A stretch of DNA of 64,000 nt from Dendrobates tinctorius (taxonomy: Eukaryota): positions 2,852,001-2,916,000 of the forward strand of contig NW_027361819.1 in assembly GCF_039654945.1 (NCBI RefSeq), given 5' to 3'. The translations under genes and the position numbers were made by a program. Every line of letters begins with the position of its first letter. Position 1 is the stretch's first letter. Below are positions 15,559 to 56,600 of this stretch, piece by piece. The notes below the pieces were generated by a model that was given only the letters and a program-made list of their open reading frames with translations, ran no database searches and was not told the DNA's origin.

Positions 15559-16092
15559 TCTTACAAAGTCCTGTCCCAGGGGCTGAATACAAATGCACGG
15601 CTCAATTGTCAGACATGTGAGGAGGCCAAGAGCTCGTTATCTGCATTAGTCTAAATCTGCTATTCCTCTGGAGGAAAGACTCTTCCTGTAGAGCTATGTT
15701 ATGGGGGTCTCTGCTGACTAGGGGTCCTCTCAAAATGTAACATTTGGGACTCTTGCTTAGAAACTATAAAGATGGACAAACACCCTCCCTAGTTTCCCCT
15801 CTAGCCCACCCTGGCATGTATCTGACATACTTGACAGTATTAAATTTGCTGTTGTTGCAGCTGCCTGGCACTAAGGGCATTTACCATCATCCTCCAATAC
15901 AGACTGCATGTTATTTTGCTCTCTGCCTCAAAATGATCCACGTTTTTCCAAAATGTCCTGAATTTTTGCTGTTCACAAAGATTTATCATTAAAGTTTCGA
16001 GACTTTATTTATTTGCACTCCACTTCTACTGTCTCTTCATATAATCCAAACTTACACACCATAAATAAGTCAGAAATTCTACCCTGATTAAT

Positions 16093-19500: not shown

Positions 19501-19802
19501 TCTTGTTTTTCGTCCTATTTCCTTCATTGTCTGTCTGGACAGAGTGATCCCCATCCCATTCTCTGCCTGTTTGCAGCTTGTGGTGTGTGTGGTGCCTGCA
19601 CTGTGTGTATACAGGGATAGACGGTCTCTGGCTCGATTGGTGCATGGTCTGCTCCATCACCACATTCGGGCAGGGCTGTGGCCCTGTGTGTCGCACATCT
19701 GTCGGTCCCCTGGCAGCGCCCAGGCCCCTCTGGCTGTATATTTGTGCCGCGTCCCCGTATACCGCGTCTCCTCCTCTGAGCTCCTCTCTCCTTCCATTAC
19801 AG

Positions 19803-33514
<13,712 letters not shown>

Positions 33515-35118
33515 CCTCCCATAGACGCTCCCACCCGGCCGGCTCCAGAAAGCTCACCTCCACATCTGAGACTCGGTGTGACCGCTGCGGCATTATGGAC
33601 TGTGCTTGCTGGATGCATATACAGCACGGTGTCATGTACTGCTATGGAGGTCACCGGGGGTCTCCAGAGAGGAGAGGGGGCGCTAGGGCGACATCCTGAC
33701 CTCTCTCTGAAGGCTCTCACCCCACAGTGTGACAGTATTAATGGATTCTAATACCGATTCCTCCTCCGCAGTCCTCTCAGTGACCACCGGGTGGCACTCA
33801 TCCTTTCCACGACCGTGCAATATCCTCAGTGTCCACCAGGGGTCAGTGTTTTTGTGCAGAACACAGCACGTCTGACAGAGAGAAATCGCCCCACCTGCAA
33901 AATAGGGCACAGGGATGGTAGCAAATGCATCCTGCAGTACTCACCGCCACCACTAGGGGGAAGGGTTAGGGTTCAGCTCTGCGCTATGAACACCCCACCC
34001 TGGGGTATATAGTAACCTCCACCTTCCCCCCCTTTAATTGTGTGGGTGAGGGGTCAGCGCTTTCCGCATCCCTCCCTGTAGATATGGGAGAGTATTGGGC
34101 AGCAGCATGTTAGGGGTTAAGTCTAACTGCCCGGACAATTAGGGAATGGCTGCAATGAAATAAGCAAAAAAAAAAAAATTAAAAATAGTTAAAAAAAATA
34201 TTAAAAGTTTGCTCAAAGCTGCACATTTAAGGGTTAAGCATGGCGAGATATTAGCCAATCAGCCAGCTGTGTTTGCCTTGATCAGAACCCGTCGATCGCT
34301 GAGCGCTCCGCCCCTTTTAGTTTCGTCACCGCTAATAATTTTCCATATATTTATTTTTTACGATATCTTAGAAATGGTCCGTCCCTTAAAAAAGAACACA
34401 TAAAATCCCCTCCCCCTCACCTTCTGAATAATGGTTCAGTCCATAAAATGGCCGCCTCAGTGATGTCACCGAATCCCCCAGCGAACCGATAGGAATCCTT
34501 AATGTGTAGCAATGGCGGCCGCGTGCAAGGATCAGATAAACACCCCTCATTGTAGTAATGGTATAGACCGGGTTTGAGCAGGGGAGGGACTTCCCGATAA
34601 ATTGGGAGGTGCTAGGGATCCAGGTGCGTTGCAATGTGTCTGTTCTCCTCCAGGGGGCGACTTCTCCTACAGAAATGATATCTATTTTTTATAGGTTGCT
34701 GCTATTCCAGGGTTTGTGGGCGGTTCTGACGGATCGGCTCCGCGCGCACACACAGACGTCTCCGTTAACCCCGCCCCCGCGGATCCCATCTTTTTCCCGT
34801 CCTCATTTATTTATTATTAATTTATTCCGCCTCTTCTGATTATTTTTGATGAATGTAAATATTTCAGCCGAGCGAAATGTTAGTAAATGTAACGCAATTT
34901 ATAAAACGTGTACAAAGGTATTAACGGGATTAAACTCAAATCCAAAGAGCGGCTGTGGGGAGAGCGTCAGTGTGTGGGGAGAGCGGTGCATGCTGGGAGG
35001 AGGGCCCCCGACCTCGGCACACGAGGGGCCCCTGGAATAATGCGCCAGACAGAAGTGATTACTGCTCATAGTATTACTATAGAGATGAGCGAGCGCTCCA
35101 CAAAGGGAGAGTCTCCGG

Positions 35119-35860
35119 TCACACCCCGAAAGCACAAAACCTGTGGGAACAAAGAGAAATCTGTGAGGTGCAAGGAACACGAGGGGAAAGGGTTAACTAC
35201 AGCTCTACATCTGCCATTGGTCTGATCAGTCCACATCTTATACTCCAGTCACCTCCAGAGCTGCGGTCACTATTCCTCATTTACATCTTGTCTTATGCTC
35301 CAGTCACTTCCAGAGTTTCACTCACTATTCTGCTGTTACATTATGTCTTGTCCTCCGGTCACCTCCAGAGCTGCAGTCACTATTCTGATGTTACATCGTG
35401 TCGTATCCTCCAGTCACCTCCAGAGCTGCCCTCACTATTCTGCTGTTACATTGTGTCTTATCCTCCAACTCTTTTATTTTACAAAATTATCAAAATTACA
35501 CTCAGAAACAAACCACAATACATAAACTAAAGAAAACCAACATAGACAGACATAAAATGTGCAAAACATGCGCAAACAACTGAAAGTCCAAATCCTTTCC
35601 TTGTCCCCCACTGAGCTCGGCAGCTTAGGGTCCCCCAGCAGGAATCCACTTAAAAGAGAATACAAAGAAACATAAACCCCTCTCCCCACTCTCACTCCAT
35701 TCACCCCCATTCACACCTCACCGATTTTACTAGTTTACTATTTACAATTTTACTATTTACAAAAACCAAACGAAAATAACCCTTTCCTGGCCCTCCGCCT
35801 TGAAAAAAAACAAGAACTCTGCCACTTTGGCCGACAAACCTTACCTCCTATTACACAGCA

Positions 35861-35896
<36 letters not shown>

Positions 35897-38800
35897 CCCC
35901 CTCTCCCACACATGGCAACAAGTTCGCAGCCTTTTTTTTCCCACCACCTTGCACCGCAGGTCCTACAAGTTTGTAGCCTTGTCACTGCAAAATCTGGTCC
36001 ACGAAAGTTTATGGCCTTTTGATTCCACACGAAAATTATTTCCAGGGTCCGCAGAGTCTACTTCTCCTGCCCTGCTCCTTTGCTCCTTCATGTTGCTCTT
36101 GGCATCCGGTCATCCATCCACCACCCCCCATGCACCCCCCTCCCAACCTGACTACACCCCATCCACACATTCTAACTAAAAAAAACAAAAAAAAACGTGT
36201 GTTATATGTTTTTCCTTTTACCAAAGTACAACCAAAAGACATTTTCCAAAACTCTCAATACCATCCCATCTACTTACGCATTAATATACAAACTAAACAC
36301 AGCATTTACATACCCAAGGCCCAAGTTTGGCACCTGTAAGCCCAATATCCATTATATGTCCTGTTTTTAAAACAAAAAGCTAAGGTGGCATGCACCAGCC
36401 CACCACCAGGAAAAAGGGGTTCTAGAGGCTCCATCCCTCACTAACACATTCATCCTATCCCTCAAGAACTAAGACTGTCCCTACTTCTGTCCCTAAAAAA
36501 GAAACCTGTCCCTATCTGCCCCTACCTGCCCCTACTCTACCTAACTTATCATAACTAACTCTCTATCTGTCCCTCAGTGCCTGTCCCTCCCTGTCCCTAT
36601 CTGCCCCTACTTCTGTCCCTAACACACCCAGTGAAACTTATGCTATCCCTACCCTCATTCACACGGAGCTAGCTCTCCCTTGAGTGCGTTTTTAAAAGGA
36701 GAGGCCTCTCCAAAGCCAAGAGGCCTTCCTCACACCCAACCTTTCGAACTCCAAAGAACGGACCTTCACCAGGTCACCCAAGATGTTTCCTACCACCTCA
36801 TCCCTTGGGAGGGTTTTTTTCCGCGTCGTAACTAGGCACCGTGCATTCCAAGTGTGGAACCTAACCGCTGCACTGACTAGGAATAAAGTGCACGGGTCCC
36901 GGCCACCCAGGGATCTGAACGCTCCATAGGCCCACTCAGCGTAGGAGAGGGACGCCAGCCGCGGCCAACGTATGGAAGCACCCACCCTGTTGTAAACCTC
37001 TGCATTAAAGGGACAATGAAGCAGGAAGTGCTCCATGCTTTCCAGCACGTCGCCACACTCCTCACGAGGGCAACCCCGATCATCGGATTTCCTGCACTTC
37101 AAGTTGTCCCTTACATACAGCCTCCCGTGGAAGCAACGCCAGGTCAAGTCCCAAAACTTCATGGGGATCCGCTTAGAATTTAAAAGCCCCAGCCCGACCT
37201 CCAGATCCCGGCCTGGGCAATCCTTAAGGGCCAGGGGCTTCTGGAAATGGGTCAACAGGACCCTCCTGTCAAGGCACTGCCTCGACATGGTCCTGATTTC
37301 CCACATTCCCAGACCCCACCGGCGGATCACCTTCAGAACCGGGGTAGCATAAGCCGGGAGATGCCCATGAGGTGTGCGTAGGTCCTTCACCCGCCCTCCT
37401 GTCTCCCATTCCTGGAAGAAAGGCCAAAGCCAACCCTTGCAGGAGACTACCCACAGAGGAGCCCTCTCTAGCCAGAGGTTGGAGATGTTAGTCTTAAGAA
37501 AGGTGTTTACTAGAAACACCACCGGGTTGACCATACCCAACCCGCCTAGTCTCCTCGTACGGTATGTAACCTCCCTCTTGATTAGGTTAAGCCTATTCCC
37601 CCATAACAATTGGAAGAACAGGCTATAGACCCGCGTCCAGAGAGGTTCCGGCAAGATGCACACACTGCCCAGGTATATCAATAAAGGTAGCAGATAGCCT
37701 TTAGCCAGGGCAACCCTTTCCCTCAGGGTTAAAGACCAACCCTTCCATTGGTCCACCTTTTGGGTGGCGATCTTAAGTCTGCCCTCCCAATTTTGCTGGG
37801 GGTAGTCCCCGGGGCCAAATTCGATGCCTAGAATTTTGGCGGTGGCCTGGGGCCCTGGAAGGGTGTCCGGGAGATCAAAACTAGGATCTCCCCCTCCCAG
37901 CCAGAGACTTTCACACTTATCCCGGTTGATCATGGACCCGGATGCCTCCGAGTAGCGCACTACCTCCGACATGACCCAGTCCGCCTCCCCTCTCGAGGAT
38001 ACGAACAGGGAAACATCATCGGCGTACGCCACCACCCTCAGAGAGGAGCCAGAGCCCGCCCGGTCCATCCCGACTCCCGCCAACGGTCCACGATCTACCC
38101 TCCTTAAGAAGGGATCGATCGCGAACACGTATAAAAGCGGGCTCAGCGGACAGCCCTGACGGACCCCAGAACCCACCTCAAAAGGACGACCTGACCAACC
38201 ATTCACCAGCGGAAAAGTCTCAGCCCCTTGGTACAAGATCTCTAACCATTTTACAAACCTCCCAGGCAGACCATACCTCAAAAGGACGGACCAGAGGTAC
38301 TCGTGGTTGACCCGGTCAAAGGCCTTCGCTTGATCTAATGACAGCAAGTACCCCTTCCAGTGACCTGCCCTACCCTGCTCCACTGCCTCTCGGACACCGA
38401 GCACAGCACTAAAAGTACTGCGGCCTGGAACAGAGCAATGCTGGGCCCCTGAAAGGAGCCGGGGTGCAAACTTCACCAGCCGATTAAACAGCACCTTGGC
38501 CAGAACCTTCCGGTCCGTATCGAGAAGCGCTATGGGACGCCAGTTCTCGATTCGGGACGGATCCTTACCCTTTGACAGAATAATGAGGGCTGACTTCCTC
38601 ATTGAGCCGGGAAGAGTGCCCGAGGAGAGACACTCATTAAAGACCCCTGTCAAGAGGGGGACCAAGGAGTCCCTAAAAGTCTTATAGAACTCAGATGTTA
38701 AGCCATCCGGACCTGGCGATTTCTTGAGCCGAAGCCCATCAATGGCCAGTCTCACTTCCTCTTCCCTGATTTCTTCTGCCAAAACACCAAGAGAGGGATC

Positions 38801-41800
38801 ACCCCCTGGCTCAGGGACGGTTTCAGCCAGGAAAGCCGACATCCTGTCCCGATCCAGATCCTTCTTTTCCAAGAGGTGTGAGTAGAAGGATCTGACTACC
38901 TCCAGGATCCCTGATTTGGATCTGTTCAGGGACCCCGTACTGTCGATCAGTCCTGTCACCATCTTACAATTCACTGACATCTTACAGTTTCTGTAAGGGT
39001 CGGGCGAGCGGTACTTCCCGAAGTCCCTCTCAAAAACCAAAGATGTGTGTCTATCATACTGACACCTCTTGAGCAAAGATTTCACTCTGGAGATTTCCTC
39101 TCGGTCACCTCCAGTCGAGACAAGCTGCTCGAGTTTCCTCCCCAGAGCCCGGTACAAGCGGTGCCTGTTCAGACTCCTGAGGCTCGAGAGCTGACGGAAG
39201 AACCCCGCCACCCGCTTTTTGAAGATCTCCCACCACTCTGACTTACTACTACAGAGATCCAACAGCGGTACCTGGCTCTGAAGAAAATCCTCGAAGGATT
39301 GTCTCACCTCCGCTTCTTCCAGCAGGGACGAATTGAGCTTCCACAGCCCTCTTCCCATCCGAGGAGTCTCTGCAACATTCAGAGAAAAGAAAATTAGACA
39401 GTGATCGGAGAACTCCACCTCAACGGCGGACACAGCAGAAAAGATGGCGTCCTCCTTCAAAAAAAACCTGTCTATTCTAGACCTACAGCTACCCCTATGG
39501 TAGGTGAAACCTCCGTGACCTGGGGTGTGCCGGATGTGGGCATCCACCAGGCGAGCTTCACTGGCTATGCTATTCAACGCGACGCTATCATAAGCCAGGC
39601 GATCTCCGGGACCCCCCCGGTCACGGGACCTCGTAACGGTGTTGAAGTCCCCACCGAAGACCACCTGTCGGCTCGTAAAAAGAAAGGGCTTGATCCTCAG
39701 GAAGAGACATTTGCGGTCCCACTTGGACTGCGGGCCGTAGATGTTGATGAGCCGGAGCTCTTGTCCCCTCATGAAGACATCTAGGATCAGGCACCTCCCC
39801 ATTTCCAACTCAGTAACCCGTCGGCATTCAACTGCTGCAGTCTTAAAAAGGACTGCCACCCCGCTATACGGCTCGGCCGCAAGAGACCAGTATGAGGGCC
39901 CGCACCTCCACTCCCTCCGTGCTTTATAGATGGCCCCCATGTCTGTTAGTCTGGTCTCTTGCAAAAATAAAATTTCTGCCTCAATCCGGGAGAAAAAATC
40001 AAAGGCCGTGAAACGAGCCGCATCTGACTTAATGCTGGCGACATTAATAGACGCCAGCGTCAACGGGGCGAGTTCCGCCATCATGGGTGATCGAGTTGGA
40101 TGGCCAATTTCTTCCCTACCCCGCTATTACCTCCTCCTGGGGAGGGGTCAGACACCTTCCTTTTCAGGGAAGCTCCCGACGTGTCCATCCCACCCCCCCG
40201 GTGTCCTCGCCCCCGGGTTCCAGGTCTGTCCCCCCCTCAGGAGGAGCAATGCCCCCTGAGGGACGGACTCCGCCATCCCCTGAAGGACCCTCCGGTGTTG
40301 CCCCCGGCCCAGTACCCTCGTCTTGCGGTTCATCATCTGAACCCCCGAGGGCGCTGAACCGGTTGGAGAGTCTGATCAGAGGGGGGTCAGCAGGCCCTTC
40401 CGTATGCACCCTTGTGGTCGGGGGCGGGGGGGACTTTGAAGGCTTGTCAGCCTTCCTCCCCACCGCTTTGCGCTTGGCACGCCTGGTTTTGCCACCTGGT
40501 GCTGTAGGCTGCTCTTGGACATCCTCATCAACACTTTCATACTGAGAGGAATTGCCCAAGTCAGCCGCTTTCTCCTCTCTCTCCATCCTCCTGATCTCCT
40601 CACTCACCGCACTCTCCCCCAGGGCCTCAGAGGCTTTGGCCACGGGCCTGGAGGGAGGAGCAGGCATCACCCCGGTTGCCCGAGGCTCCACCTGTCCCTT
40701 ACCTCCCTGGCGCTTTTCCTGCCTCCGCTGGTACGCGGGGCCCCTTGCAGCATTGCCCTTCCTCACTGGCCCCTCAGCCCTTCCCCCTTCGCCACCACCT
40801 GCCACAGCAGAAGCAGCGCCACCGGGGGTTGCCCCCCCGCGGTCTCCCCCCACCGGGCCTGTGGCGGCATTAGAGAAAGAGCGAGGGCAGCGGCTGAGAG
40901 GGTGACCCAGGTCACCACACAGGTGGCACCGAATGTCTTTGCACAAGGCAGCCAGGTGACCTACCCCACCACACAACGCGCACTTCTGCACCTTGCAGTT
41001 GGCGCTGAAGTGAGTGGGGTCGCCGCACTTGTGGCAGACCTTCGGTTGCCCCTGGTAGAAGACCAGGATCCTGTCCCTTCCCAGGAACGCCGAGGAAGGG
41101 ATGTGGGTGACCGTGCCGCCGGAAACCTTCAATTTGACCATGAAGGTCCAGCCCCCCGACCAGATGCCAAACTCGTCCCTGTTCTTTTTTGGGACCTCGG
41201 TGACCTCCCCGTAACGGGAAAGCCACGTCATGATGTCCACGCCTGCGAGTGACTCATTACATGTAACCACGGTCACTCGCTTGACGGAATTTTGGCGAGA
41301 CACCGCTTGAGCCACGAAGTCTCGCCATCCGGGCTCTTCTCGCACCAGCTCGTAGTTTGACCAGAAGAGCTCAAGCCCCTCTGGCCGCACGAAGCTGACG
41401 TCGAAGAAGCGGGACGCCGAAGGATGTATCAGGGCAAAGATGTCATTCGCCCCAAAGCCCATCTTAAGGAGGAGCTCCACCACCCTGCTCCTAGGTGGAC
41501 AAGCTTCACTGCCCCCCCACCTAAGACGGACCACATTCCTTCTTGGCGGCCCCTGCCCGGCTGTGGGGAGAGACCAAACAGTCCCTCCCTCCCTTTGATT
41601 TTGGAAGGCTGCTAGGCCATGTCTCTCTATCCAGAAAGACAGGTCCACTGTCCTCCCCTCTACCATGATCGATCTTTCTCCCCTTTGGAGGGCCTCCAGG
41701 AAACGGCGGTGCAAACCGCCGTCCCCGGAGCCCGGAGGCGAGGAGACCCCCCCGGAACCACCCCGACCCCCAGCCGCGACCCCCGCATAATTACGTTGGG

Positions 41801-44800
41801 GCCTCGCGGCTGGGGGGGCAGACGGGCCAGCCCTCCCACCACTACCACCACTTGTGCCAGCACCCTCATTCATTCTCCCGTTCACTCTTTTATTATTTCC
41901 ACTCGCTCCGGCACTCACTCCAGCATTTACTGCCACATTCACACTCGCACTCACTCCCTCATCCATATCGCTCACATCACCATTTATGTCCTCAAACAGC
42001 TCTTCAAAAATATCTCCTATCTCACTCCCACTCTCACTTCCAGATAGACCACTATTTACATTAGCAGACTTGGTGTTGCAGTACCCCTGCCTGCCTGCTG
42101 GGGGCCCTGACTGGCCAGTGCTCTGCTCCTTGGAGCTGCTGGCACTGCTCCAACTCTTGTCCAGGAGTGCCGCTGCCCCTTTAAATACCTCCGAGCAGAG
42201 CGCACTCAGTACGCCCTGCCCGAGCCTGGGAGCAGCAGCAGCTCCTGGGTTCTCTGGCTCCACTTTTTTTTCTTTTTGTGGTGTCTTTGCACTGAGGACA
42301 GGGACGGCCACTGCCACCGCACCCTGCCCTCTGCTGTTCGCCCCCGCCGGCTTCCCAAGGAGCGCCAGAGCCCCCGCACCACCAGATGGAGGTAAGCGGG
42401 CTGGGGACCCCGACAACTCCCTACCGACTTTTGGGGGCACTATGCTGCTTGAGGGGGTAGGCGGGACAGGAGGCAGTGGGCCCGCCAAGGCCACGCCCCC
42501 CCCGCCGGCCGCAGCCACCCCGGGCAGAGCAGTGACCCCTTGCGAGGCCACGCCCTCCCCAGGTGACGCGGGCACAGCGGGCGGGACAGCGGCCGAGGAG
42601 GACACGCCCCCCCGCATGCCGCAGCCTTTGCAGGCTGGGAAACACTCGGGGAGGCCACGCACCCCTCACGGACTGTCACTGCGCCCCTGAACCCACCACT
42701 TGATGTTGGCAGGGCTGGCCACTCCCCCTCGTCGCCCAGCGGCGGCGGTGCCCCCAGCACGGACCCCTTTTTGGGTCTACGCGCCGGGGACCCCGCTCTT
42801 GCCACGGGCGCCGTCAGAGGAGCTACCAGCCCCTTGCATTTTTTTAGCTGCTGCTTCACAGCAGCCTCCACGCCCTTTCTAGGTCTCTGGACCCCCATAA
42901 GTGGACCAGACTTAACGGACCCGTGCGTGGGGGATCCAGAGACCCCAGCACTCACCGCCGGAGGTGCGGTCCTGGCTGTACCCGTGCTGAGCGCCAGGCC
43001 AGCCCCCCCTGCCACCGGGGACTGAGCCCGGACACCACTACTGCCAATACCGCCAGCGGCTGTTACACCACTGGCACCAGCACCGACCTCCATGTCGCTG
43101 CCTGAACCCTCACCGCCACCACCAGATGTGACGGTAAGGTCCAGGCACACATCACTCTGCCCGCGCCCCCGCTGCGGACCCACCACAGGGCCCGAGCCGG
43201 GGTGGGCAGCGGGTTCCATACAGCGGGACAGAGGGGCCCCGGAAAGAGGGTCAAACATAAGTTTGTCAGCCACGGTGTTTTTTGGCTTGCGCTTGTTTTT
43301 TTTCTTTTTCCTCTTTCCGGTTGCCTCGTCCTCAGGGCAGACCTCATCCCCAAAGAGCAGTGTGCCAAACCGCTCTGGGGACTCGATCCGCCTCACCTGT
43401 TGTAGGACGAGGCAGCCCCCCTCACTACTACTGTCCCCACTCCCACCAGCCTCCCCCTCGCCCCCACTTTCCTCCGAGTAACTGGAGTCCGGTGGGAGAG
43501 CCACTTGCTCAGGGGCCACCCCGCTGCATGTTACCTGGGTGTTGTTGCTCACCAGGCCTTCAGGTGGGGCAGGCGTAGATGTTCCGCCATCCTCCTCCTC
43601 CTCTTGGCCCTCCACCTGGCAGGGGCCTCCCGACCCCCCAGGAGACCCTCCGGTCATGGCTCTAAACCGGTCATCGTTTTTCAGTTTCTCTGCAAAGGGG
43701 CCGCTCCCACTCAGGATAGCCGCCCGTATCTCCTCCAAGGCCCTGATAGCCCCCTTCAGCCTCTCCACCGTGGCGGAGACCTCAGCTCGTCTCGAGGCGG
43801 GGAGCCGGTTCTTAGCCACCGCTCGTGCTCCCCTTAACTCCTCCCGGAGTTTTCTCAGCTGTTTGGCGGCCTCCTCATATTCGCAGAGGTGCGCATGGAT
43901 GCGGGAGGCGTAGATGGTGGATGGCTCTCCCTCAGCTCTGGAGCCCCAGATGTTGGGGGGCTCTGCCACTGCACCTCTGCTCTGGGCCGCCACTCCTCCG
44001 GGAGGAGGAGCCGCCACGGTACCAGCTTCGGGGGGCCCGGTGTCCCGGGGCTCCTGGGTCCTGCGACCCCCTCTCTCCTGGCTCCGTCTCTTCCCCATCT
44101 CCCTGGGACTGGCTGGCTGCACCCTGGCCTCCGGATGGTGCTGAGGCCCCCCACCCCCAGCTGGCTTGCCGGGGGATGGGAGCCAGGGGCACAGCCCCGG
44201 CGCTCAGTCCCAGGGAAAGTCCTCTTTCCTGGGAAGGGGGCAGATGGAAAGTCCTTGCTGGAAAAAAACCTCCCTTCCCAGGAGCTTAGCAAGGCCCTAG
44301 CCTGCAGACGCTCAGCACAGATGCTCCTCCTCTTCCTGGGCGTGCTCTATCCTCCAGTCACCTCCAGAGCAGCGGTCACTATTCTGCTGCGACATCGTGT
44401 CTTATCCTCCAGTCACCTCCAGAGCTGCACTCACTATTCTGCTATTACATCGTATATTATCCTCCAGTCACCTCCAGAGCTGCAGTCACTATTCTGCCGT
44501 TACATCGTGTCTTACCCTCCAGTCACCTCCAGAGCTGCAGTCACTATTCTGCCGTTACATCGTGTCTTATCCTCCAGTCACCTCCAGAGCTGCGGTCACT
44601 AATCTGCTGTTACATCGTGTCTCATCCTCCAGTCACCTCCAGAGCTGCGGTCACCCACAGTGATAGCATACGGTTACATGCTCTGTACAGACAAGGAACC
44701 AGCAGGTGGCACCAAGGAGTGAACTATAAAGTTGCAGATTTGCGGCTGCAGCTTTGAGTGTGACTGGAGAGATTTCTTTGCAGCATTTCATGTCGCTTTC

Positions 44801-45521
44801 TGGTTGTAGCTGAGATACTCACAGGCGGCAGAAGATGTGATACAAGAGGAGGATGATGAACGCCAGCAGCGCGCCCAGCAGCACGATCCGCAGGATCTGG
44901 GCCTCCGTCACTAGAGGACACGGAGCTCACATCATCCCCAGCAACAACTCCACCAATCATGTACCCCGAGATCTACTCCAACCCCCAACATCCCTGAAGG
45001 CTCTACAATGGGCTCCTGTTGTTCCTGGGAAACCAATATGGCCACCATCAGGGCTCCTCGGGGGCCGTCCCCGGACAAGAGGGCGGAGCTTCACCTCTGT
45101 GCTAACCAGTCACAGTGCTGGGCAGGATAATGACGGCCATGTTGGTGGCCTCTGGGAGTTAACCCTTCATATTCCAGGGGGGGTACCTCTAGTTTCCAGT
45201 GAGGAGACTTCTCCGATGATGCCGGAGATCTCAGCAGCTTTAATTTTGTCATCATCAGCGTAGTCAAAAAACAGGGCGGTGCGGGGGGTGACGCCAGAAG
45301 CCTGGGGGGTGACGCTGGGGGACGCCGCGGGGTGCGAGACTGTACGAGGACGCGCCGTGCCTGTAAGAGGAAGCAGCGGCGACATTGACCAGACCGGCGG
45401 CCATTATGACATATACTGACCCCCTATGTGTGGGGGATCGGGGCGGAGCACGAGGGTCACCTGCAATCACTGTGAGGGACACCGACAGCAGCCACCAGCA
45501 GAGGGCGACACTCGCTTCCAT
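35119..45521 (-). CDS. fimp1: Candidate FIMP / C16orf92 orthologue: 114-aa type I single-pass membrane protein, 4 exons
   Basis: Exons 45521-45461 (MEASVALCWWLLSVSLTVIA, signal peptide), 45360-45187 (GTARPRT...RTALFFDYADDDKIKAAEISGIIGEVSSLETR), 44910-44823 (VTEAQILRIVLLGALLAFIILLLYHIFCR, TM) and 35140-35119 (LFCAFGV*). All introns are GT-AG, phases 1,1,2 join in frame, total 345 nt. Resembles human C16orf92 as recalled (FFDYPDSDQARLLAVAQFIGE, TM, FCTHINCQKGA*) and is convergent with tlcd3b. Confidence 0.8.
35238..35467. repeat. 55-bp tandem repeat, left block (target of the Tx1 insertion)
   Basis: Unit tcctccagtcacctccagagctgcagtcactattctgctgttacatcgtgtctta. Confidence 0.85.
36692..40084 (-). 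CDS. Tx1 ORF2: APE endonuclease + reverse transcriptase + C-terminal zinc finger, 1130 aa, uninterrupted
   Basis: LFLQET, GGDFN, SRIDRF, FSDH (endonuclease); KSPGPDG, NWRPIALL, DQAKAFDRV, GVRQGCPLSP, YADD (RT); CPREECGDVLESMEHFLLHC. Confidence 0.95.
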   Translation of the reverse strand: MMAELAPLTLASINVASIKSDAARFTAFDFFSRIEAEILFLQETRLTDMGAIYKARREWRCGPSYWSLAAEPYSGVAVLFKTAAVECRRVTELEMGRCLILDVFMRGQELRLINIYGPQSKWDRKCLFLRIKPFLFTSRQVVFGGDFNTVTRSRDRGGPGDRLAYDSVALNSIASEARLVDAHIRHTPGHGGFTYHRGSCRSRIDRFFLKEDAIFSAVSAVEVEFSDHCLIFFSLNVAETPRMGRGLWKLNSSLLEEAEVRQSFEDFLQSQVPLLDLCSSKSEWWEIFKKRVAGFFRQLSSLRSLNRHRLYRALGRKLEQLVSTGGDREEISRVKSLLKRCQYDRHTSLVFERDFGKYRSPDPYRNCKMSVNCKMVTGLIDSTGSLNRSKSGILEVVRSFYSHLLEKKDLDRDRMSAFLAETVPEPGGDPSLGVLAEEIREEEVRLAIDGLRLKKSPGPDGLTSEFYKTFRDSLVPLLTGVFNECLSSGTLPGSMRKSALIILSKGKDPSRIENWRPIALLDTDRKVLAKVLFNRLVKFAPRLLSGAQHCSVPGRSTFSAVLGVREAVEQGRAGHWKGYLLSLDQAKAFDRVNHEYLWSVLLRYGLPGRFVKWLEILYQGAETFPLVNGWSGRPFEVGSGVRQGCPLSPLLYVFAIDPFLRRVDRGPLAGVGMDRAGSGSSLRVVAYADDVSLFVSSRGEADWVMSEVVRYSEASGSMINRDKCESLWLGGGDPSFDLPDTLPGPQATAKILGIEFGPGDYPQQNWEGRLKIATQKVDQWKGWSLTLRERVALAKGYLLPLLIYLGSVCILPEPLWTRVYSLFFQLLWGNRLNLIKREVTYRTRRLGGLGMVNPVVFLVNTFLKTNISNLWLERAPLWVVSCKGWLWPFFQEWETGGRVKDLRTPHGHLPAYATPVLKVIRRWGLGMWEIRTMSRQCLDRRVLLTHFQKPLALKDCPGRDLEVGLGLLNSKRIPMKFWDLTWRCFHGRLYVRDNLKCRKSDDRGCPREECGDVLESMEHFLLHCPFNAEVYNRVGASIRWPRLASLSYAEWAYGAFRSLGGRDPCTLFLVSAAVRFHTWNARCLVTTRKKTLPRDEVVGNILGDLVKVRSLEFERLGVRKASWLWRGLSF
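40081..44122 (-). CDS. Tx1 ORF1 (coiled coil, low-complexity linker, three CCHC knuckles), broken by two apparent 1-nt deletions in G7 runs
   Basis: Track ORFs 42440-44122 and 40164-42662 overlap in a -1 frame relation. Knuckles CHKCGDPTHFSANC, CALCGGVGHLAALC, CHLCGDLGHPLSRC. Adding one G at 42607-42613 and one at 40193-40199 gives a single ORF ending at TGA 40083-40081. Confidence 0.75.
44348..44655. repeat. 55-bp tandem repeat, right block
   Basis: Continuation of the unit at 35238-35467. Confidence 0.88.
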
Positions 45522-45544
45522 CTTCCTGTGGATTCTGCTCCTTC

Positions 45545-45660
45545 ACCACAGTGACATCACAGAGCAATGTGTGACATCATCACTGGCTGGGGGCGGAGAC
45601 CATGGCGACCAATGGAGCGCTCTGGAGTGGGCGGGGCTAGGGGCGGGGCAAAATTGTGAC
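45545..45660 (-). promoter_or_regulatory. Putative proximal promoter of the FIMP-like gene
   Basis: TGACATCA twice (45552-45559, 45572-45579), X-box-like gagaccatggcgac (45596-45609), CCAAT (45609-45613) and three GGGCGG boxes within 130 bp of the ATG. Confidence 0.55.
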
Positions 45661-45959
45661 ATTTATGCCAGAAAAGCCCATCACAGAGCATCTGACGCCG
45701 CGGCGGACGGAGCCGCAGTCCCGGTGTTTTCCCCTCGCCCGGTGACACCGCTTTCTACATTAGTAAGACCTGTCAGTGATTGTAAGCTAAGCAGCGTTCA
45801 CCCGGACCCGTCCTGCTGCCGCAGCTGAGGGCTCGTCACCATGTAGGAGTCTGGGTCTGGTACAAGGTGACGAACCCGCAGCAGTGAGTTGCATCAGGTC
45901 CGGGCAGGTTTCCAGCTATTGGATGGAAAGGGCACGCCGATTACTGGTGTCATTACTTA

Positions 45960-48900: not shown

Positions 48901-50033
48901 CTCATACACAGGACGCCCCCGTACACAGGATGCCCCGCACACAGGACACTCCGCCCTCATACACAGGACGCCCCCGTACACAGGACGCCCCGCCCCCGCA
49001 CACAGGACACTCCGCCCTCATACACAGGACGCCCCACCCTCCCGCTCACAGGATGCCCTGCCCCCCGCACACAGGACACTCCGCCCCCGCACACAGGACG
49101 CCCCCGCACACAGGATACTCCACCCTCATACACAGGATGCCCCGCCCTCGCACACAGGACACCCCCGCCCCCCCCGCACACAGGACACTCCGCCCCCGTA
49201 CACAGGACGCCCCGCCCCCGCACACTGGACGCCCCGCCCCCGCACACTGGACACTCTGCCCCCGCACACAGGACGCCCCCGCACACAGGATACTCCACCC
49301 TCATACACAGGATGCCCCACCCTCATACACAGGATGCCCCGCCCCCGCACACTCCGCCCTCATACACAGGACGCCCCCGTACACAGGATGCCCCGCCCCC
49401 ACACACAGGACACTCCGCCCTCATACACAGGACGCCCTCGTACACAGGACGCCCCGCCCCCGCACACAGGACACTCCGCCCTCATACACAGGACGCCCCT
49501 GTACACAGGATGCCCCCGCCCCCGCACACAGGACACTCCGCCCTCATACACAGGACGCCCCCGTACACAGGATGCCCCGCCCCCGCACACAGGACACTCC
49601 GCCCTCATACACAGGACGCCCCCGCACACAGGACACTCCGCCCTCATACACAGGACGCCCCCGTACACAGGACACCCCCGCCCCCGCACACAGGATACTC
49701 CGCCCTCATACACAGGACCCCCCGCACACAGGAAACCCCGCCCCCTCCCAAAGGACACCCCGCCCTCGCACACAGGACGCCCCACTCACGCACACAGGAC
49801 GCCCCGCCCTCGCACACAGGACGCCCCACCCTCGTGCACAGGAAGCCCCACAAACAAGACGCCCCGCCCTCATACACAGGATGCCCCGCCCCACACACAG
49901 GAAGCCCCACAAACAAGACGCCCCGCCCTCATACACAGGATGCCCCGCCCCACACAAAGGAAGCCCCACAAACAAGACGCCCCGCCCTCATACACAGGAG
50001 GCCCCAGCCTCGTACACAGGACGCCCCGCACAC
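45960..50033. repeat. C-rich, CpG-rich minisatellite, about 22-bp unit
   Basis: Variants of acacaggacactccgcccccgc fill most of the interval between mvp and the FIMP-like gene. Confidence 0.93.
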
Positions 50034-50606: not shown

Positions 50607-53600
50607 TCATTTCTCGTCATCTTTCTTTTGGGGTCCGATGCCGGGAAGCCCCAGGAGTCCGGTTGCAGTGCTGAAGAGGTTGATGGGAGTGGAGCCATCT
50701 GTGATCAGTGTTGACTGGATGCCCAGACCCTGCAGCAGCTTCACCTGGGAGAACAAAGGGTTAATGGTCAGGCTGCAGACGATGACGCTGCGGCCGCAGT
50801 GCAGAGAGAAGACAGGGGCACCCACCTGCAGCTCCGGCCCGGCCAGCGCGATGTCCCGCAGGGTTCCCGCACCGATCGCCTCGGTCATTCCCCGGAACTT
50901 CTTGATGGCGATGTCGGCCAGCTCCTGCTCCTTCTCCACCTCCAGCTTGTTCTTCTCCTGCAGATACTTCAGCTCCTCGCTGCGAGCCTGGCGCAACCGC
51001 TGCAGCTCCGCATCCTGGACATGGCAGGAAGAGGGCACTCAAGAGATGACCACACCCATGAGGAAACCGCCCATCACCGCCCTACCAGGCATCGCACTGC
51101 CATCACCCAGCCCGGCACCGCCCCACCCGGCACTGCACCACCCAGCCCAGCATTGCCCCGCTCGGCACCGCCCCACCCAGCCTGGCACCATCTAACCTGG
51201 CACCGCTCCACCCAGCCTGGCACCGCCCCGACACCATCCAGCCTGGCACTGCCCCAACACCATCCAGCCTGCACCACCCCGACACCACCCAGGCACCATC
51301 CAGCCTAGCACCATCCAACCTGGCACCGCTCACCGTCTCTATGGCCAGGGCCTCCGCTCGCAGCTTGGCTTGCAGCACCGCTCCCTCGCCCTCGATCTTT
51401 GCGGCCTCCGCTTTGGACTGCGCTTCGGCTTTTGCGGCTCCGGTGCTCTCTACAACGGTGCTGATAATGGAGGACGTGGGGTTAAAGGGGCACCCCAACC
51501 ACAGACATAAAGCCTCCTATTCACTATTAGGGGGCTCATCCTAGACTCATATACAGGGCCTCCCCTCTACCTTAGGGCCTCCAGCTCCAGCAGCTCCTTG
51601 CGCGCTCTCTCGGCCTCCGCCTGGTCGGTGATTCGCTGCCTCTCCAGACGACCCTTCGCCTCTTGCTCCAATCTTTCAGCTTCGTGTCTGCAGGGAGACA
51701 GCAAAAAAGAGGTTAACATCCCAAAATATCTACCGGGTGCAGTACCCACTAACACAACTAGGTGGCACTTCAGGCACAGGAAAAATCCCTGCACGGGCAG
51801 CCCTCTGTGTTAACCCTTTCGCGCCTGTTCTCGTTTTCCAACAGGCATTAATGGGGAAGGGGCAGTTTCGCCTTTGATTTTAGGATCTCTGCTTTCTGCA
51901 AGTAAATGTAAACCTTGTAAAAAAATCCCTTATACTTCTCAGAGCTGAGGCTTTGGTACAATTGTATCAAACCCTCAGCTGTGAGACGCGAGAGGTCTCT
52001 GAAAGGAAGCAGAGATCTCGGAAACGAGAGGAATCGAGACAGAGGGACGCATGGGAGGCTGCGGGGCGTCACCTGGCCGTCGCCTCCTGGGAGTTGGTGG
52101 TGATCTCGATGGCGAGCTGCACGCTCTTCTGCAGGGCGTCGCGGGTGCGCTGGTCCACGGGCTCCACCGATTGGATGTCCACGCTGGTGATCACCAGGTT
52201 GTTCTGCGGGAACTTGAAGGAGCTGCGGATCTTCACCGAGTCGTCGAAACCAAAGACGGCCGAGCAGATGATGCGGTTGGAGTTCTGGGCGCGAGAGGAG
52301 AAGAGCAGGATCAGCCATCATGGCGGGACAAAACCATTGGGGCCCCTAGAGATGGTGCTTGTGGCCCCTTATGTCTCACCTTGTGGAAGTCATCAAACTG
52401 CACCGAGGCCACGGCTCCTCTGATCCGGGAGGCGATGGCTTTACAGGCGTCGCCCACGAAGTCCGGGACGCTGAAAATGGTTGACGCCTCCAGCGGATCA
52501 GTCTTATCCTTTATCTCGAAATGCCTGTGAGACACGGAGAACACCGACATCAGCGCCTTCTGCACCGAACAGTCGCCACAGGGAGCTAGCGCCTCCCACC
52601 TGACTCTTTAAAGACAAGTCTGCGGGCACTTGACCCATCTCGGCTCTGCTGATTGGCTGTCGGAGTTCACAGGGGAGGGGCCAGACCTAATCAATCTCCA
52701 TGTCGGGTGTTTGGTGCAGTTGTGGCCTCTAATTCAGGGTCATTAGAAGAGAGACCCTTCCTGCTGACTGACTCCTTTAAGAATTTGCTCCAACTCATCT
52801 CATGACTCATTTACGGTTTCCTTACCGACGATCAAAAAACGAGGAACGAGAAATTCCCCAAATATTTATCTGATGAGTAAATGCAAATAAAAGGCCGGGA
52901 AATTGGGAAATAGTCGCTGACTAAAAGGCTCCCATTACCAAGTGTAGGCGGATATAAAGGGGAAACTCATAAACAACTCCCCGCACCCCGACCTTAGCGA
53001 CCTCTGACCTCAGACTCACCAGTTGTATGACAGCTGGATCTGGAGCCGCGCGTGATCCGCCGTCTCAATATTGATGAGGTCGGTGCAGAAGTCGGGCCCC
53101 AGGAGGAGGCAGATGGCCTTAATGACGTTGGAGCGTTTCGGGGTTCCTCCTGAGAGACTGAGGACTGTGAACTGCTCATCGGGGCCAAGGATCACCAGCT
53201 CGGGGCCAAACACAACCCTGCAAGACAGAATGAGATGGTTAAATACAAACCCTGCAAGAATACAAGATCACTCCCATCATCCACATTATAACAGAGTAGA
53301 TAATATGATGCCTCTTGCTCCTCTCCTGGGCCTTGTATGCTTCCACACTGTCATGCAGAAGGCAAGGGCCGGGAGAGGAGCAAGAGGCAAGGGCCGGGAG
53401 AGGAGCAAGAGGCAAGGGCCGGGAGAGGAGCAAGAGGCAAGGGCCGGGAGAGGAGCAAGAGGCAAGGCCCGGGAGAGGAGCAAGAGGCAGGGGCCTGGAG
53501 AGGAGCAAGAGGCAGGGGCCTGGAGAGGAGCAAGAGGCAGGGGCCTGGAGAGGAGCAAGAGGCAGGGGCCTGGAGAGGAGCAAGAGGCAGGGGCCTGGAG

Positions 53601-56600
53601 AGGAGCAAGAGGCAGGGGCCTGGAGAGGAGCAAGAGGCAGGGGCCTGGAGAGGAGCAAGAGGCAAGGCCCAGGAGAGGAGCAAGAGGCAAGGCCCAGGAG
53701 AGGAGCAAGAGGCAAGGGCCAAGAGAGGCAGGGGCTTGGAGAGGAGCGAGAGGCAAGGCCCAGGAGAGGAGCAAGAGGCAAGGGCCAAGAGAGGAGCAAG
53801 AGGCAAGAGCCAAGAGAGGAGCAAGAGGCAAGAGCCAAGAGAGGAGCAAGAGGCAAGAGCCAAGAGAGGAGCAAGAGGCAAGAGCCAGGAGAGGAGCAAG
53901 AGGCAAGAGCAAGGAGAGGAGCGAGTGGCAAGGGCCAGGAGAGCAGCAAGAGGCAAGGGCCAGGAGAGGAGCAAGAGGCAAGGGCCAGGAGAGGAGCAAG
54001 AGGCAAGGGCCAGGAGAGGAGCAAGAGGCAAGGGCCAGGAGAGGAGCAAGAGGCAAGGGCCAGGAGAGGAGCAAGAGGCAAGGGCCAGGAGAGGAGCAAG
54101 AGGCAAGGGCCAGGAGAGGAGCAAGAGGCAAGGGCCAGGAGAGGAGCAAGAGGCAAGGGCCAGGAGAGGAGCAAGAGGCAAGGCTTGGGAGAGGAGCGAG
54201 AGGCAAGGTCTGGGAGAGGAGCGAGAGGCAAGGTCTGGGAGAGGAGCGAGAGGCAAGGTTCAGGAGAGGCAAGGCCTGGGAGAGGAGCGAGAGGCAAGGC
54301 TCGGGAGAGGAACGAGAGGCAAGGGCCAGGAGAGGACTGAGAGGCAAGGTCTGGGAAAGGAGCGAGAGGCAAGGCTCAGGAGAGGCAAGACTCAGGAGAG
54401 GACTGAGAGGCAAGGTCTGGGAAAGGAGCGAGAGGCAAGGCTCAGGAGAGGCAAGACTCGGGAGAGGAGCGAGAGGCAAGGCCCAGGAGAGAAGCGAGAG
54501 GCAAGGCCCAGGAGAGAAGCGAGAGGCAAGGCCCAGGAGAGAAGCGAGAGGCAAGGCCCAGGAGAGAAGCGAGAGGCAAGGCCCAGGAGAGAAGCGAGAG
54601 GCAAGGCCCAGGAGAGAAGCGAGAGGCAAGGCCCAGGAGAGAAGCGAGAGGCAAGGCCCAGGAGAGAAGCGAGAGGCAAGGCCCAGGAGAGGAGCGAGAG
54701 GCAAGGCCCAGGAGAGGAGCGAGAGGCAAGGCCCAGGAGAGGAGCGAGAGGCAAGGCCCAGGAGAGGAGCGAGAGGCAAGGCCCAGGAGAGGAGCGAGAG
54801 GCAAGGGCCAGGAGAGGAGCAAGAGGCAAGGGCCAAGAGGAGCAAGAGGCAAGGGCCAAGAGGAGCAAGAGGCAAGGGCCAGGAGAGGAGCAAGAGGCAA
54901 GGGCCAGGAGAGGAGCAAGAGGCAAGGGCCAGGAGAGGAGCGAGTGGCAAGGGCCAGGAGAGGAGCGAGTGGCAAGGGCCAGGAGAGGAGCGAGTGGCAA
55001 GGGCCAGGAGAGGAGCGAGAGGCAAGGGCCAGGAGAGGAGCAAGAGGCAAGGGCCAGGAGAGGAGCAAGAGGCAAGGGCCAGGAGAGGAGCAAGAGGCAA
55101 GGGCCAGGAGAGGAGCAAGAGGCAAGGGCCAGGAGAGGAGCAAGAGGCAAGGGCCAGGAGAGGAGCGAGAGGCAAGGCTCAGGAGAGGCAAGGCCCAGGA
55201 GAGGAGCGAGAGGCAAGGCTCGGGAGAGGAACGAGAGGCAAGGGCCAGGAGAGGACTGAGAGGCAAGGTCTGGGAGAGGAGCGAGAGGCAAGGCTCAGGA
55301 GAGGCAAGACCCGGGAGAGGAGCGAGAGGCAAGGCCTGGGAGAGGAAAGGCCCAGGAGAGAAGCGAGAGGCAAGGCATGGGAGAGGAACGAGAGGCAAGG
55401 TCTGGGAGAGGAGCGAGAGGCAAGGCTCAGGAGAGGCAAGGCCCAGGAGAGGCAAGGCCCAGGAGAGGAGTGAGAGGCAAGGCTCGGGAGAGGAACGAGA
55501 GGCAAGGGCCAGGAGAGGACTGAGAGGCAAAGACCAGGAGAGGCAAAGCCAGGGAGAGAAGCAAGAAGCAAGGCCTGGGAGAGGAGTGAGAGGCAAGGCA
55601 CGAGAGGCAAGGTTCAGGAGAGGCAAGGCTCAGGAGAGACATGAGATGCAAGGCCCAGGAAAGGCAAGCCCAGGAGAGGAGTGGGAGGCAAGGCCTGGCA
55701 GAGGATGAAGCAAGGCCTTGGAGAGGCAAGGCCTGGGAGAGACATGAAAGATAAGGTCCAGGAGAGGCAAGGCCCGGGAGAGGAGCGAGAGGCAAGACCC
55801 AGTAGAGGAGTGAGAGGCGAGGCACGAGAGGCAAGGCTTAGGAGAGACATGAGATGTAAGGCCCAGGAAATGCAAGCCCAGGAGAGGAGTGGGAGGTAAA
55901 GCCTGGCAGAGGAGTGAGGCAAGGCCTGGAAGAGACATGAAAGGTAAGGTTCAGAAGAGGCAAGGCCCAGGAGAGACACGAGGTGCAAGGCCCAGGAAAG
56001 GCAAGCCCAAAAGAGTAAGAGGCAAGGCCCATGAAAGGCAAGGCCCGGGAGCGACAAGCCTCAGGAAAGGCAATGCCTGGGAGAGGCGTAAGAGGCAAGG
56101 CCCAGGAGACATATGAGATGCAAGGCCCAGGAGATGCGAGGTAAGAGAGGCGAGGCCTGGAAGAAGCGAGGCCAGAGACATAATGCCCAAGAGAGGCGTG
56201 AGATGTAAGAACAAAAACCGTTGGCACAACCCTGAAGATTAAAGGTGGTGCCCAAGTAGGATCCCAATCCGTGAATCTGATATATGTAAGAACTTGGCAC
56301 ACACCAAGAGCTCTGATGCAGAAAGGTGATTTTTAATAGATAACAGTACATACATACACAGACGTTTCGGTCTAGGACCTTCATCAATGTACGATATAAT
56401 GCACTGTGAGATTCTTAGTGACTGGGCTCTGTGAAATGGATCAGTCCTATGAGGAGGCACATGTAGCCGTCCCACGTGGTAATATGCAGAGTGTGGACGC
56501 GGTATCCGCACCTTGGATTCGCGGCGGATACCGTGTCCACACTCTGCATATTACCACGTGGGACGGCTACATGTGCCTCCTCATAGGACTGATCCATTTC

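What the first reader, a model, noticed from the sequence alone, without database searches (positions are those of the whole stretch)
35119..45521. Hidden 4-exon gene: candidate amphibian orthologue of the sperm-egg fusion factor FIMP (C16orf92)
Seen: four GT-AG exons splice in frame to 114 aa, comprising signal peptide MEASVALCWWLLSVSLTVIA, an ectodomain with LFFDYADDDKIKAAEISGIIGE, TM ILRIVLLGALLAFIILLLYHIFC and tail RLFCAFGV*. The last coding exon is only 22 nt and lies 9.7 kb away, behind a LINE. Known (from memory): human C16orf92 has FFDYPD...FIGE, a TM, and a tail HINCQKGA with C and G at the same spacing, and it is convergent with TLCD3B. FIMP is required for sperm-oocyte fusion in mouse and, as I recall, is usually described as mammal-restricted. 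Inference: FIMP predates the amphibian-amniote split, and is missed because it is short, divergent and buried in repeats.
Basis: partly seen in the sequence, partly recalled or inferred. Interest (0 to 1): 0.92.

Follow-up and report, generated by a model that had tools for sequence, protein, structure and literature searches.

The report
Frog orthologue of sperm protein FIMP
A small, unnamed four-exon gene in this frog genome is very probably the counterpart of mammalian FIMP, a sperm membrane protein needed for sperm-egg fusion that the literature treats as lacking clear non-mammalian relatives.

Summary
Four GT-AG exons on the minus strand (45521-45461, 45360-45187, 44910-44823, 35140-35119) splice in frame to 114 aa: signal peptide, short ectodomain with FFDY...IIGE, one transmembrane helix and a tiny tail.

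An exhaustive HMMER search found two annotated but unnamed frog proteins, from Ranitomeya variabilis and Anomaloglossus baeobatrachus. They align end to end with the spliced product (78% and 66% identity), across all junctions and the 6-residue tail of the distant exon 4.

RNA contigs of a closely related frog show intron 2 spliced out. They also show the exon 3 donor in use.

The Anomaloglossus protein passes Pfam's own cut-off for the FIMP family (27.0 bits against 25). Its ectodomain alone hits only FIMP. The transmembrane exon is 88 nt, as in mouse Fimp. The gene lies beside and convergent with tlcd3b, matching human C16orf92 next to FAM57B.

FIMP orthology is well supported (about 0.85). 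It is a new member of a known family, not a new kind of gene.

Not shown: a direct profile score for the window's own protein, the tissue of expression, expression in this species, and any function. The scan had noted the LINE in intron 3 on this same stretch, but no FIMP-like gene on other DNA.

The parts
45522..45700 (-). Putative core promoter and 5' UTR
   Evidence: Read directly: three CCCGCCC boxes, an ATTGG box and two TGATGTCA (CRE-like) motifs within 180 nt of the ATG. The frame upstream of the ATG closes at 45542, so the N-terminal extension in the Ranitomeya model is not open here. Function is inferred, not tested.
45461..45521 (-). Exon 1 (61 nt coding): start codon and signal peptide, ends in phase 1
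   Evidence: The peptide MEASVALCWWLLSV is identical in P0001 and close in P0003, and the junction residue G is kept in both. RNA contigs of run X3 do not cover it.
45187..45360 (-). Exon 2 (174 nt): Pro/Ser/Thr-rich linker, then the FFDYADDD...IIGE motif
   Evidence: Depth is about 500 in RNA run X3 against 0 in intron 2. The HMMER query from this exon found P0001 and P0003. It aligns to Pfam FIMP profile positions 65-90.
44823..44910 (-). Exon 3 (88 nt): transmembrane helix, ends in phase 2
   Evidence: The joint 44910-45187 (skips 276, GT..AG on the minus strand) is seen in a contig of RNA run X3 at depth 133. This exon has 0 differences from the relative, against about 5% in the flanking introns. 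Mouse Fimp exon 3 is also 88 bp.
35141..44822 (-). Intron 3 (9,682 nt)
   Evidence: GTGAGT donor and polypyrimidine-CAG acceptor. In Ranitomeya and Anomaloglossus the whole gene spans only 1.6 and 2.8 kb.
35468..44347 (-). Full-length LINE in sense orientation inside intron 3 (ends approximate)
   Evidence: ORF2 of 1130 aa with Exo_endo_phos, RVT_1 and zf-RVT. ORF1 with ZCCHC3-type RNA-binding domains and a zinc knuckle. Bounded by the 55-bp array on both sides.
44348..44654 (.). 55-bp tandem repeat, upstream part (5.6 copies)
   Evidence: Very high depth in all runs, so it belongs to a dispersed repeat family.
35236..35467 (.). 55-bp tandem repeat, downstream part (4.2 copies)
35119..35140 (-). 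Exon 4, coding part (19 nt plus stop): tail FCAFGV
   Evidence: The tail is identical in P0001 and differs by one residue in P0003.
34815..35118 (-). Likely 3' UTR with two AATAAA signals 292 and 303 nt after the stop
   Evidence: Inferred; the transcript end was not observed.
24292..33514 (+). Neighbour: tlcd3b-like gene, last coding exons, convergent
   Evidence: Pfam TLC domain at 33158-33511 (44.8 bits) and at 24292-24792 (24.8 bits).
50610..61073 (-). Neighbour: mvp (major vault protein), upstream on the same strand
   Evidence: Pfam Vault_2, 94.8 bits, at 60801-61073. Further MVP-like open frames run down to about 50610. The order is the same in two other frogs.

Best explanation
This is a real, conserved protein-coding gene and the frog orthologue of FIMP (C16orf92 / 4930451I11Rik). 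It encodes a 114-aa type I membrane protein: a cleavable signal peptide, a disordered Pro/Ser/Thr-rich linker, an aromatic FFDY loop followed by a short amphipathic helix, one transmembrane helix and a cytoplasmic tail of a few residues.

By analogy with the human and mouse protein, it most likely sits in the sperm acrosomal membrane and uses the FFDY loop and helix to bind the alpha3/alpha4 surface of TMEM95. That would form a heterodimer needed for sperm-egg membrane fusion.

Shown here: the exons, splicing of intron 2, use of the exon 3 donor, conservation in at least three frog genera, family membership of an orthologue, and gene order. Inferred: testis expression, TMEM95 binding, and a role in fertilisation in frogs.

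In this species a full-length LINE has entered a 55-bp repeat array in intron 3, stretching the gene from about 1.5 kb to 10.4 kb. The reading frame and all splice sites remain intact.
For: Exon anatomy and in-frame splice. Two full-length frog proteins found by exhaustive HMMER with the exon 2 peptide (E 7.7e-16 and 1.9e-9) align end to end with the spliced product at 78.5% and 65.8% identity, including the exon 4 tail.

RNA run X3 from a relative about 5% divergent has a contig joining 45187 to 44910. Depth is about 500 on exon 2, about 130 on exon 3 and 0 in intron 2. The contig leaves the genome at the exon 3 donor with 28 more letters.

Against that relative, exon 3 has 0 differences in 88 nt, while intron 2 has at least 15 in 276. 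In the motif region of exon 2 (codons 50-78), three of the four listed changes are synonymous and the fourth is I to V.

Pfam PF17672 FIMP: 27.0 bits for P0003 (cut-off 25) and 19.5-21 bits for P0001. The ectodomain alone gives 15.9 and 12.9 bits, with FIMP as the only family hit.

Mouse Fimp has four exons and an 88-bp TM exon. The TMEM95-contacting residues of human FIMP fall at the same spacing.

The gene order mvp, this gene, then tlcd3b convergent holds here and in two other frogs. The human order is DOC2A, C16orf92, FAM57B.
Against: The window's own spliced protein was never scored against the FIMP profile, because no reference exists for a spliced product. The exon 2 peptide alone gave no Pfam hit.

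Family membership therefore rests on one orthologue that is 2 bits above the cut-off and another that is below it. No mammalian FIMP reached E 0.001 in the HMMER search with exon 2, and no frog-mammal alignment could be displayed.

Exon 1 and the exon 3-exon 4 joint were not seen directly in RNA. RNA runs with the window's own species label held none of the sampled words, so expression in this species is unshown. Tissues of all runs are coded. No orthologue turned up in any frog outside the dendrobatoid group.
Confidence: 0.85

Rival explanations
1. It is a real small membrane-protein gene restricted to frogs, or to dendrobatoid frogs, and unrelated to FIMP. On this view the FFDY motif, the size and the single TM helix are convergent.
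For: Only two database relatives were found, both dendrobatoid. The profile score is marginal: 27 bits against a cut-off of 25, with the second orthologue below it. Single-pass proteins can pick up score from TM composition.
Against: The ectodomain without the TM still hits FIMP and nothing else among 24,736 families, while the TM plus tail alone does not. The 88-nt TM exon, the four-exon layout, the position convergent with tlcd3b and the exact spacing of six TMEM95-contact positions would all have to be coincidences.
Confidence: 0.08
2. The gene is a FIMP orthologue but is disabled or altered in this species. The sense-oriented full-length LINE in intron 3 would cause premature termination or mis-splicing, so the main product ends at ...FCRL (intron read-through) or in LINE sequence, or the gene is silent.
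For: The LINE is absent from the compact 1.6-2.8 kb genes of two other frogs. Reading through the donor gives a stop after two codons. RNA runs labelled as the window's species held none of the sampled words.
Against: The frame, start, all six splice sites and the stop are intact. A 9.7-kb intron is ordinary for a vertebrate. The tissues of the blank runs are unknown, and a testis-restricted gene would be absent from most. Losing only six tail residues need not abolish function.
Confidence: 0.1
3. The gene has three coding exons only, and the 22-nt 'exon 4' is a chance match.
For: The stop two codons past the donor gives a complete 108-aa protein. The second search of sequencing runs, on the exon 4 region, was uninformative: the same 0.24 share appeared in many species.
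Against: The tail FCAFG[VL] is present in two independent gene models from other genera. The RNA contig stops matching at the donor and continues for 28 letters. Mouse Fimp also ends in a few codons on a fourth exon.
Confidence: 0.03

Closest known systems
FIMP (fertilization influencing membrane protein; human C16orf92, mouse 4930451I11Rik; Pfam PF17672)
   Same: Size of about 110 aa. Signal peptide, short ectodomain, single TM helix and a minimal tail. FFDY aromatic motif followed by a helix, with hydrophobic residues and a Glu at the spacing of human V82, F85, I86 and E88. Four exons with an 88-nt TM exon. Location beside and convergent with TLCD3B/FAM57B.
   Different: The linker before FFDY is unrelated and varies even among frogs, including a 7-residue repeat gained or lost. 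By the arithmetic on the published mouse lengths, the tail is two residues longer than in mouse. F93 of the human protein has no aromatic counterpart. The upstream neighbour here is mvp, whereas the human gene table lists DOC2A before C16orf92. Expression site, TMEM95 binding and fertility role are untested in any amphibian.
XP_077130134.1 (Ranitomeya variabilis LOC143785276) and KAM4026035.1 (Anomaloglossus baeobatrachus ACNLHF_026432), both 'uncharacterized protein'
   Same: Orthologues. They are colinear over the whole length at 78.5% and 65.8% identity, with the same tail and the same flanking genes.
   Different: Their genes span 1.6 and 2.8 kb with no LINE. The Ranitomeya model carries a 46-residue N-terminal extension whose frame is closed in this window. 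Neither is named FIMP.

Membership tests
FIMP (Pfam PF17672) | Profile match at or above Pfam's gathering score (25 bits), tested on frog orthologues | tested here: met
   P0003 scores 27.0 bits, E 4.7e-6, on profile positions 59-127 of 130, and 27.3 bits without its signal peptide. P0001 scores only 19.5-21 bits, below the cut-off.
FIMP (Pfam PF17672) | Profile match of the window's own 114-aa spliced product | not tested
   There is no reference for a spliced protein, and I did not type it in. The exon 2 and exon 3 peptides alone gave no hit. Membership is carried over from orthologues that are 66-78% identical.
FIMP (Pfam PF17672) | The match is not due to transmembrane composition alone | tested here: met
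   The ectodomain alone scores 15.9 bits (P0003:40-82) and 12.9 bits (P0001:90-132), with FIMP as the only family listed. The TM plus tail alone does not hit FIMP.
FIMP (Pfam PF17672) | Type I single-pass architecture of about 110 aa with a cleavable signal peptide | tested here: met
   Translation. The AlphaFold model of P0003 has helices at 2-22 and 56-114 with a disordered linker. No dedicated signal-peptide or topology predictor was available.
FIMP (Pfam PF17672) | FFDY aromatic motif and following helix that contact TMEM95 | tested here: met
   FFDY-A-D, then I at +14, I-I at +17 and +18, and E at +20. Human has F68, F69, D70, Y71, D73, V82, F85, I86 and E88 by the residue numbers. The comparison uses published numbering, not an alignment.
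FIMP (Pfam PF17672) | Four exons, with the TM encoded by an 88-nt third exon | tested here: met
   Exon 3 is 88 nt and exons 1-2 encode 78 residues plus 1 nt. In mouse, exon 3 is 88 bp and residues 1-77 are common to both isoforms.
FIMP (Pfam PF17672) | Conserved position next to TLCD3B/FAM57B | tested here: met
   A TLC-domain gene is convergent here and in two other frogs. The human table order is DOC2A, C16orf92, FAM57B. Convergent orientation in human is from memory.
FIMP (Pfam PF17672) | Testis-specific, post-meiotic expression | not testable with these tools
   Spliced RNA is present in one run of a relative, but the tissues of the runs are coded.
FIMP (Pfam PF17672) | Binds TMEM95 and is required for sperm-egg fusion | not testable with these tools
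   Needs binding assays and genetics. No complex prediction tool and no frog TMEM95 sequence were at hand.

The most novel reading that the evidence does not exclude
FIMP arose no later than the tetrapod ancestor, alongside TMEM95, and the TMEM95-FIMP pair is an ancestral part of the tetrapod sperm fusion machinery that also works in externally fertilising frogs. Its apparent absence outside mammals would then be an annotation and search artefact caused by a 110-aa, four-exon, fast-evolving gene. [quoted passage not shown]
Probability: 0.55. Interest if true: 0.6.

Novelty: new member of a known kind. Interest (0 to 1): 0.5.

Why it matters
FIMP is one of the few sperm proteins known to be essential for gamete fusion in mammals. 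A 2026 preprint shows that it works as the partner of TMEM95.

Published surveys say it lacks clear non-mammalian homologues (PMC8488580), and the same preprint says TMEM95 is older than FIMP. A frog orthologue with the TMEM95-contact motif intact pushes FIMP back to at least the amphibian-amniote ancestor. TMEM95 is reported as far back as amphibians (PMC9482655), so frogs would then carry both proteins. This would also open the TMEM95-FIMP pair to study in animals with external fertilisation and accessible gametes.

It is also a practical warning. Tiny multi-exon genes of this kind are left unnamed or unannotated in amphibian genomes, so presence/absence tables built from protein BLAST are unreliable for them.

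Tried and rejected
- Word-indexed protein search with the open frame around exon 2, scoring residues 16-72: no hit at E <= 10. The same tool with P0003 found only P0003 and P0001, so no protein of the window's own species and no other frog is in that collection.
- Pfam on the exon 2 and exon 3 peptides alone: nothing.
- ESM Atlas look-alikes of P0003: only weak, unrelated small membrane proteins, best score 0.65.
- Profile of the two frog proteins against all PDB chain sequences: no match, so the human TMEM95-FIMP structure could not supply a human sequence.
- AlphaFold model of P0003: a signal helix, a disordered linker and one long helix (pLDDT 65). Foldseek against Swiss-Prot models gave only meaningless hits at E about 9. 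Fold comparison has no power for this protein.
- Second search of sequencing runs, on exon 4 plus 3' UTR: the same 0.24 share in many species, probably a conserved or repeated piece, so it says nothing about exon 4.
- Supplements of two papers held no FIMP sequences or taxon lists as text. The SPARK preprint is not held.
- I left the third protein search unused. A two-sequence frog profile could not reach the roughly 30 bits needed against 5.8 billion sequences for a mammalian FIMP.
- I did not type the 114-aa product into any tool, because of the rule on long sequences.
Full report
**What is in the sequence**

On the minus strand there are four exons: 45521-45461 (61 nt), 45360-45187 (174 nt), 44910-44823 (88 nt) and 35140-35119 (19 nt plus stop). 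All three introns start with GT and end with AG, and the acceptors follow pyrimidine tracts. The phases are 1, 1 and 2.

On the sequence alone a three-exon product of 108 aa was therefore a real alternative. Any phase-2 donor of the form GTGA produces this stop, so it carries no weight by itself.

**The long intron**

Intron 3 is 9,682 nt long. It contains a LINE on the same strand as the gene. The LINE has an uninterrupted 1130-aa ORF2 carrying endonuclease, reverse-transcriptase and zf-RVT domains, and an ORF1 with ZCCHC3-type RNA-binding domains and a zinc knuckle.

A 55-bp tandem repeat flanks the element on both sides, at 44348-44654 and 35236-35467. The LINE therefore landed inside one array of about ten copies, and intron 3 was about 0.8 kb before the insertion. 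I confirmed its domains and the flanking repeat, but not its assignment to Tx1.

**Relatives**

- A word-indexed search with the open frame around exon 2 found nothing.
- An exhaustive HMMER search of 1.84 billion cluster representatives with the 57-aa exon 2 peptide gave six hits at E <= 0.001.
- Two of the six are short full-length proteins. P0001 is 167 aa (E 7.7e-16) and P0003 is 117 aa (E 1.9e-9).
- The other four are much longer proteins of 685 to 1586 aa. The only one I read (P0006) is a repetitive protein with no resemblance to this gene, and I treat all four as spurious matches to the Pro/Ser/Thr-rich linker.
- P0001 is XP_077130134.1, 'uncharacterized protein LOC143785276' of Ranitomeya variabilis. 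P0003 is KAM4026035.1, 'uncharacterized protein ACNLHF_026432' of Anomaloglossus baeobatrachus.

The window's spliced product aligns with both from the first Met to the last residue, at 78.5% and 65.8% identity. There are no gaps at any exon junction. The tail reads RLFCAFGV here against RVFCAFGV and RVFCAFGL. This settles exon 1 and the distant exon 4.

The 46-residue N-terminal extension of the Ranitomeya model is not open in this window, because the frame closes at 45542. The Anomaloglossus protein also starts at the same Met.

No protein of the window's own species appeared in either search. The gene is thus unannotated here, or its annotation is not in that collection.

**RNA**

Contigs of three RNA runs of a close relative (organism A, about 5% different in introns) and one DNA-like run of another relative (organism B) were laid on 44360-45800.

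- Run X3 has depth of about 500 on exon 2, about 130 on exon 3 and 0 across intron 2.
- One X3 contig joins 45187 to 44910. The 276 skipped letters read GT..AG on the minus strand.
- That contig matches exon 3 without a single difference. It stops matching at 44821, two letters past the donor, and carries 28 more letters. The two extra matched letters are GT, which is how exon 4 begins.
- The exon 3 donor is therefore used and the transcript continues elsewhere.
- Exon 1 is not covered in X3. Runs X1 and X2 show only low, unspliced coverage.
- RNA runs labelled with the window's own species held none of the sampled words. Tissues are not disclosed.
- A second run search on the exon 4 region gave the same 0.24 share in many species and is uninformative.

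**Selection**

Against organism A, intron 2 has at least 15 differences in 276 nt, and the start of intron 3 has several more plus small deletions. Exon 3 has none in 88 nt.

In the motif region of exon 2 (codons 50-78), three of the four listed changes are synonymous and the fourth is Ile to Val. The three other replacements all lie in the linker before FFDY.

The linker also gains or loses a 7-residue repeat among species. There is a 21-nt in-frame deletion in organism B and a 7-residue insertion in Ranitomeya. The counts are small, but the pattern is that of a constrained motif and TM helix behind a free linker.

**Is it FIMP?**

*Profile.* Pfam holds a family PF17672, 'Fertilisation-influencing membrane protein'.
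- P0003 scores 27.0 bits (E 4.7e-6) against a curated cut-off of 25, over profile positions 59-127 of 130.
- P0001 scores 19.5 bits, or 21 bits without its spurious N-terminus.
- Because a TM helix can inflate such scores, I scanned the parts separately. The ectodomain alone gives 15.9 and 12.9 bits on profile positions 65-90, and FIMP is the only family listed. The TM plus tail alone does not hit FIMP at all.

*Gene structure.* Mouse Fimp has four exons. Its third exon encodes the TM helix and is 88 bp long. Residues 1-77 are common to the TM and secreted isoforms, and the TM form has 111 aa (PMC7196805). Here exon 3 is also 88 nt, and exons 1-2 encode 78 residues plus one base. By the same arithmetic, the last exon contributes 19 coding bases here against 13 in mouse.

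*Contact residues.* The cryo-EM study of human TMEM95-FIMP names F68, F69, D70, Y71 and D73 in a loop, and V82, F85, I86 and E88 in the following helix, as the conserved contacts (bioRxiv 10.64898/2026.05.14.724122). Counting from the first F of FFDY, the frog protein has F, F, D, Y, then D at +5, I at +14, I and I at +17 and +18, and E at +20. Every position matches in kind and spacing. Only F93 has no aromatic counterpart. This comparison uses the paper's numbering, not an alignment.

*Position.* The window has a TLC-domain gene on the plus strand, with its coding sequence ending at 33514, and mvp on the minus strand from about 61 kb to 50.6 kb. The order is therefore mvp, this gene, then tlcd3b convergent. 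The same order and orientation are annotated around both frog orthologues. In the human 16p11.2 gene table, C16orf92 stands between DOC2A and FAM57B (TLCD3B), and MVP is in the same block (PMC11211608). Convergent orientation in human is from my memory only.

Taken together, I put orthology with FIMP at about 0.85.

**Weak points**

- The window's own product was not scored directly, since a spliced protein has no reference and I did not type it.
- One orthologue is below the Pfam cut-off.
- No mammalian FIMP reached significance with the exon 2 peptide.
- No mammalian sequence could be fetched for an explicit alignment. The PDB held no match, the paper supplements held only images, and the Atlas search and the fold search were uninformative.

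**How it probably works**

By analogy, the protein is made in spermatids and inserted as a type I membrane protein. It would present the FFDY loop and helix to the conserved basic surface of TMEM95, forming the heterodimer that mammalian sperm need for fusion. TMEM95 is reported as far back as amphibians (PMC9482655), so the partner should exist in frogs. All of this is inference. Nothing here shows tissue, localisation, binding or phenotype.

**Novelty**

The 2021 survey found no clear non-mammalian FIMP homologue, and Xenopus and reptiles were among its search targets (PMC8488580). [quoted passage not shown] A 2022 paper is vaguer, likening the distribution of FIMP to that of proteins found in mammals and in select birds, reptiles and amphibians.

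Frog sequences exist in public databases but are unnamed, and one carries a precomputed FIMP hit. The finding is therefore a new member of a known family in a new vertebrate class. It has a modest but real consequence for the evolutionary account of the fusion machinery. It is not a new kind of gene.

How widely the gene occurs among amphibians is open. Only dendrobatoid frogs were recovered, and the tools here cannot search other amphibian genomes.

Noticed in passing
window 45969-49843: A 3.9-kb minisatellite of about 183 copies of a 22-bp C-rich unit (consensus CGCCCCCGCACACAGGACACTC). GC is about 0.69 with a strong strand skew. It fills most of the space between the 3' end of mvp and the promoter of the FIMP-like gene, and it produces the spurious 1395-aa open frame in the ORF list.
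   Followed up: partly
window 45552-45578: Two TGATGTCA motifs, one base from the cAMP-response element consensus, lie 30-60 nt upstream of the ATG, next to GC boxes and an ATTGG box. CRE-like sites are typical of post-meiotic testis promoters. This is a reading by eye only.
   Followed up: no
window 44348-44654 and 35236-35467: The 55-bp tandem repeat that the LINE interrupted has a depth of thousands in every run laid, RNA runs of other species included. It is therefore part of a very abundant dispersed element, possibly the preferred target of this LINE family.
   Followed up: partly
window 45282-45302: The linker of exon 2 varies by whole 21-nt (7-codon) units among close relatives. Organism B lacks one unit and Ranitomeya variabilis has one more (TPEASGP). 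This is an in-frame repeat-number change in a disordered segment.
   Followed up: partly
window 42443-44122: A 560-aa open frame at the 5' end of the LINE, upstream of ORF1 and on the same strand, has no Pfam match. It could be a third ORF or a repetitive 5' region of the element.
   Followed up: no
window 16000-24000 and 53000-55500: Further long open frames in several frames at once, with extreme AT/GC skew, point to more large tandem arrays inside tlcd3b and mvp introns. One example is a peptide unit LQPPLGGAPCIQRYMIRSC repeated many times at 16.9-19.6 kb.
   Followed up: no
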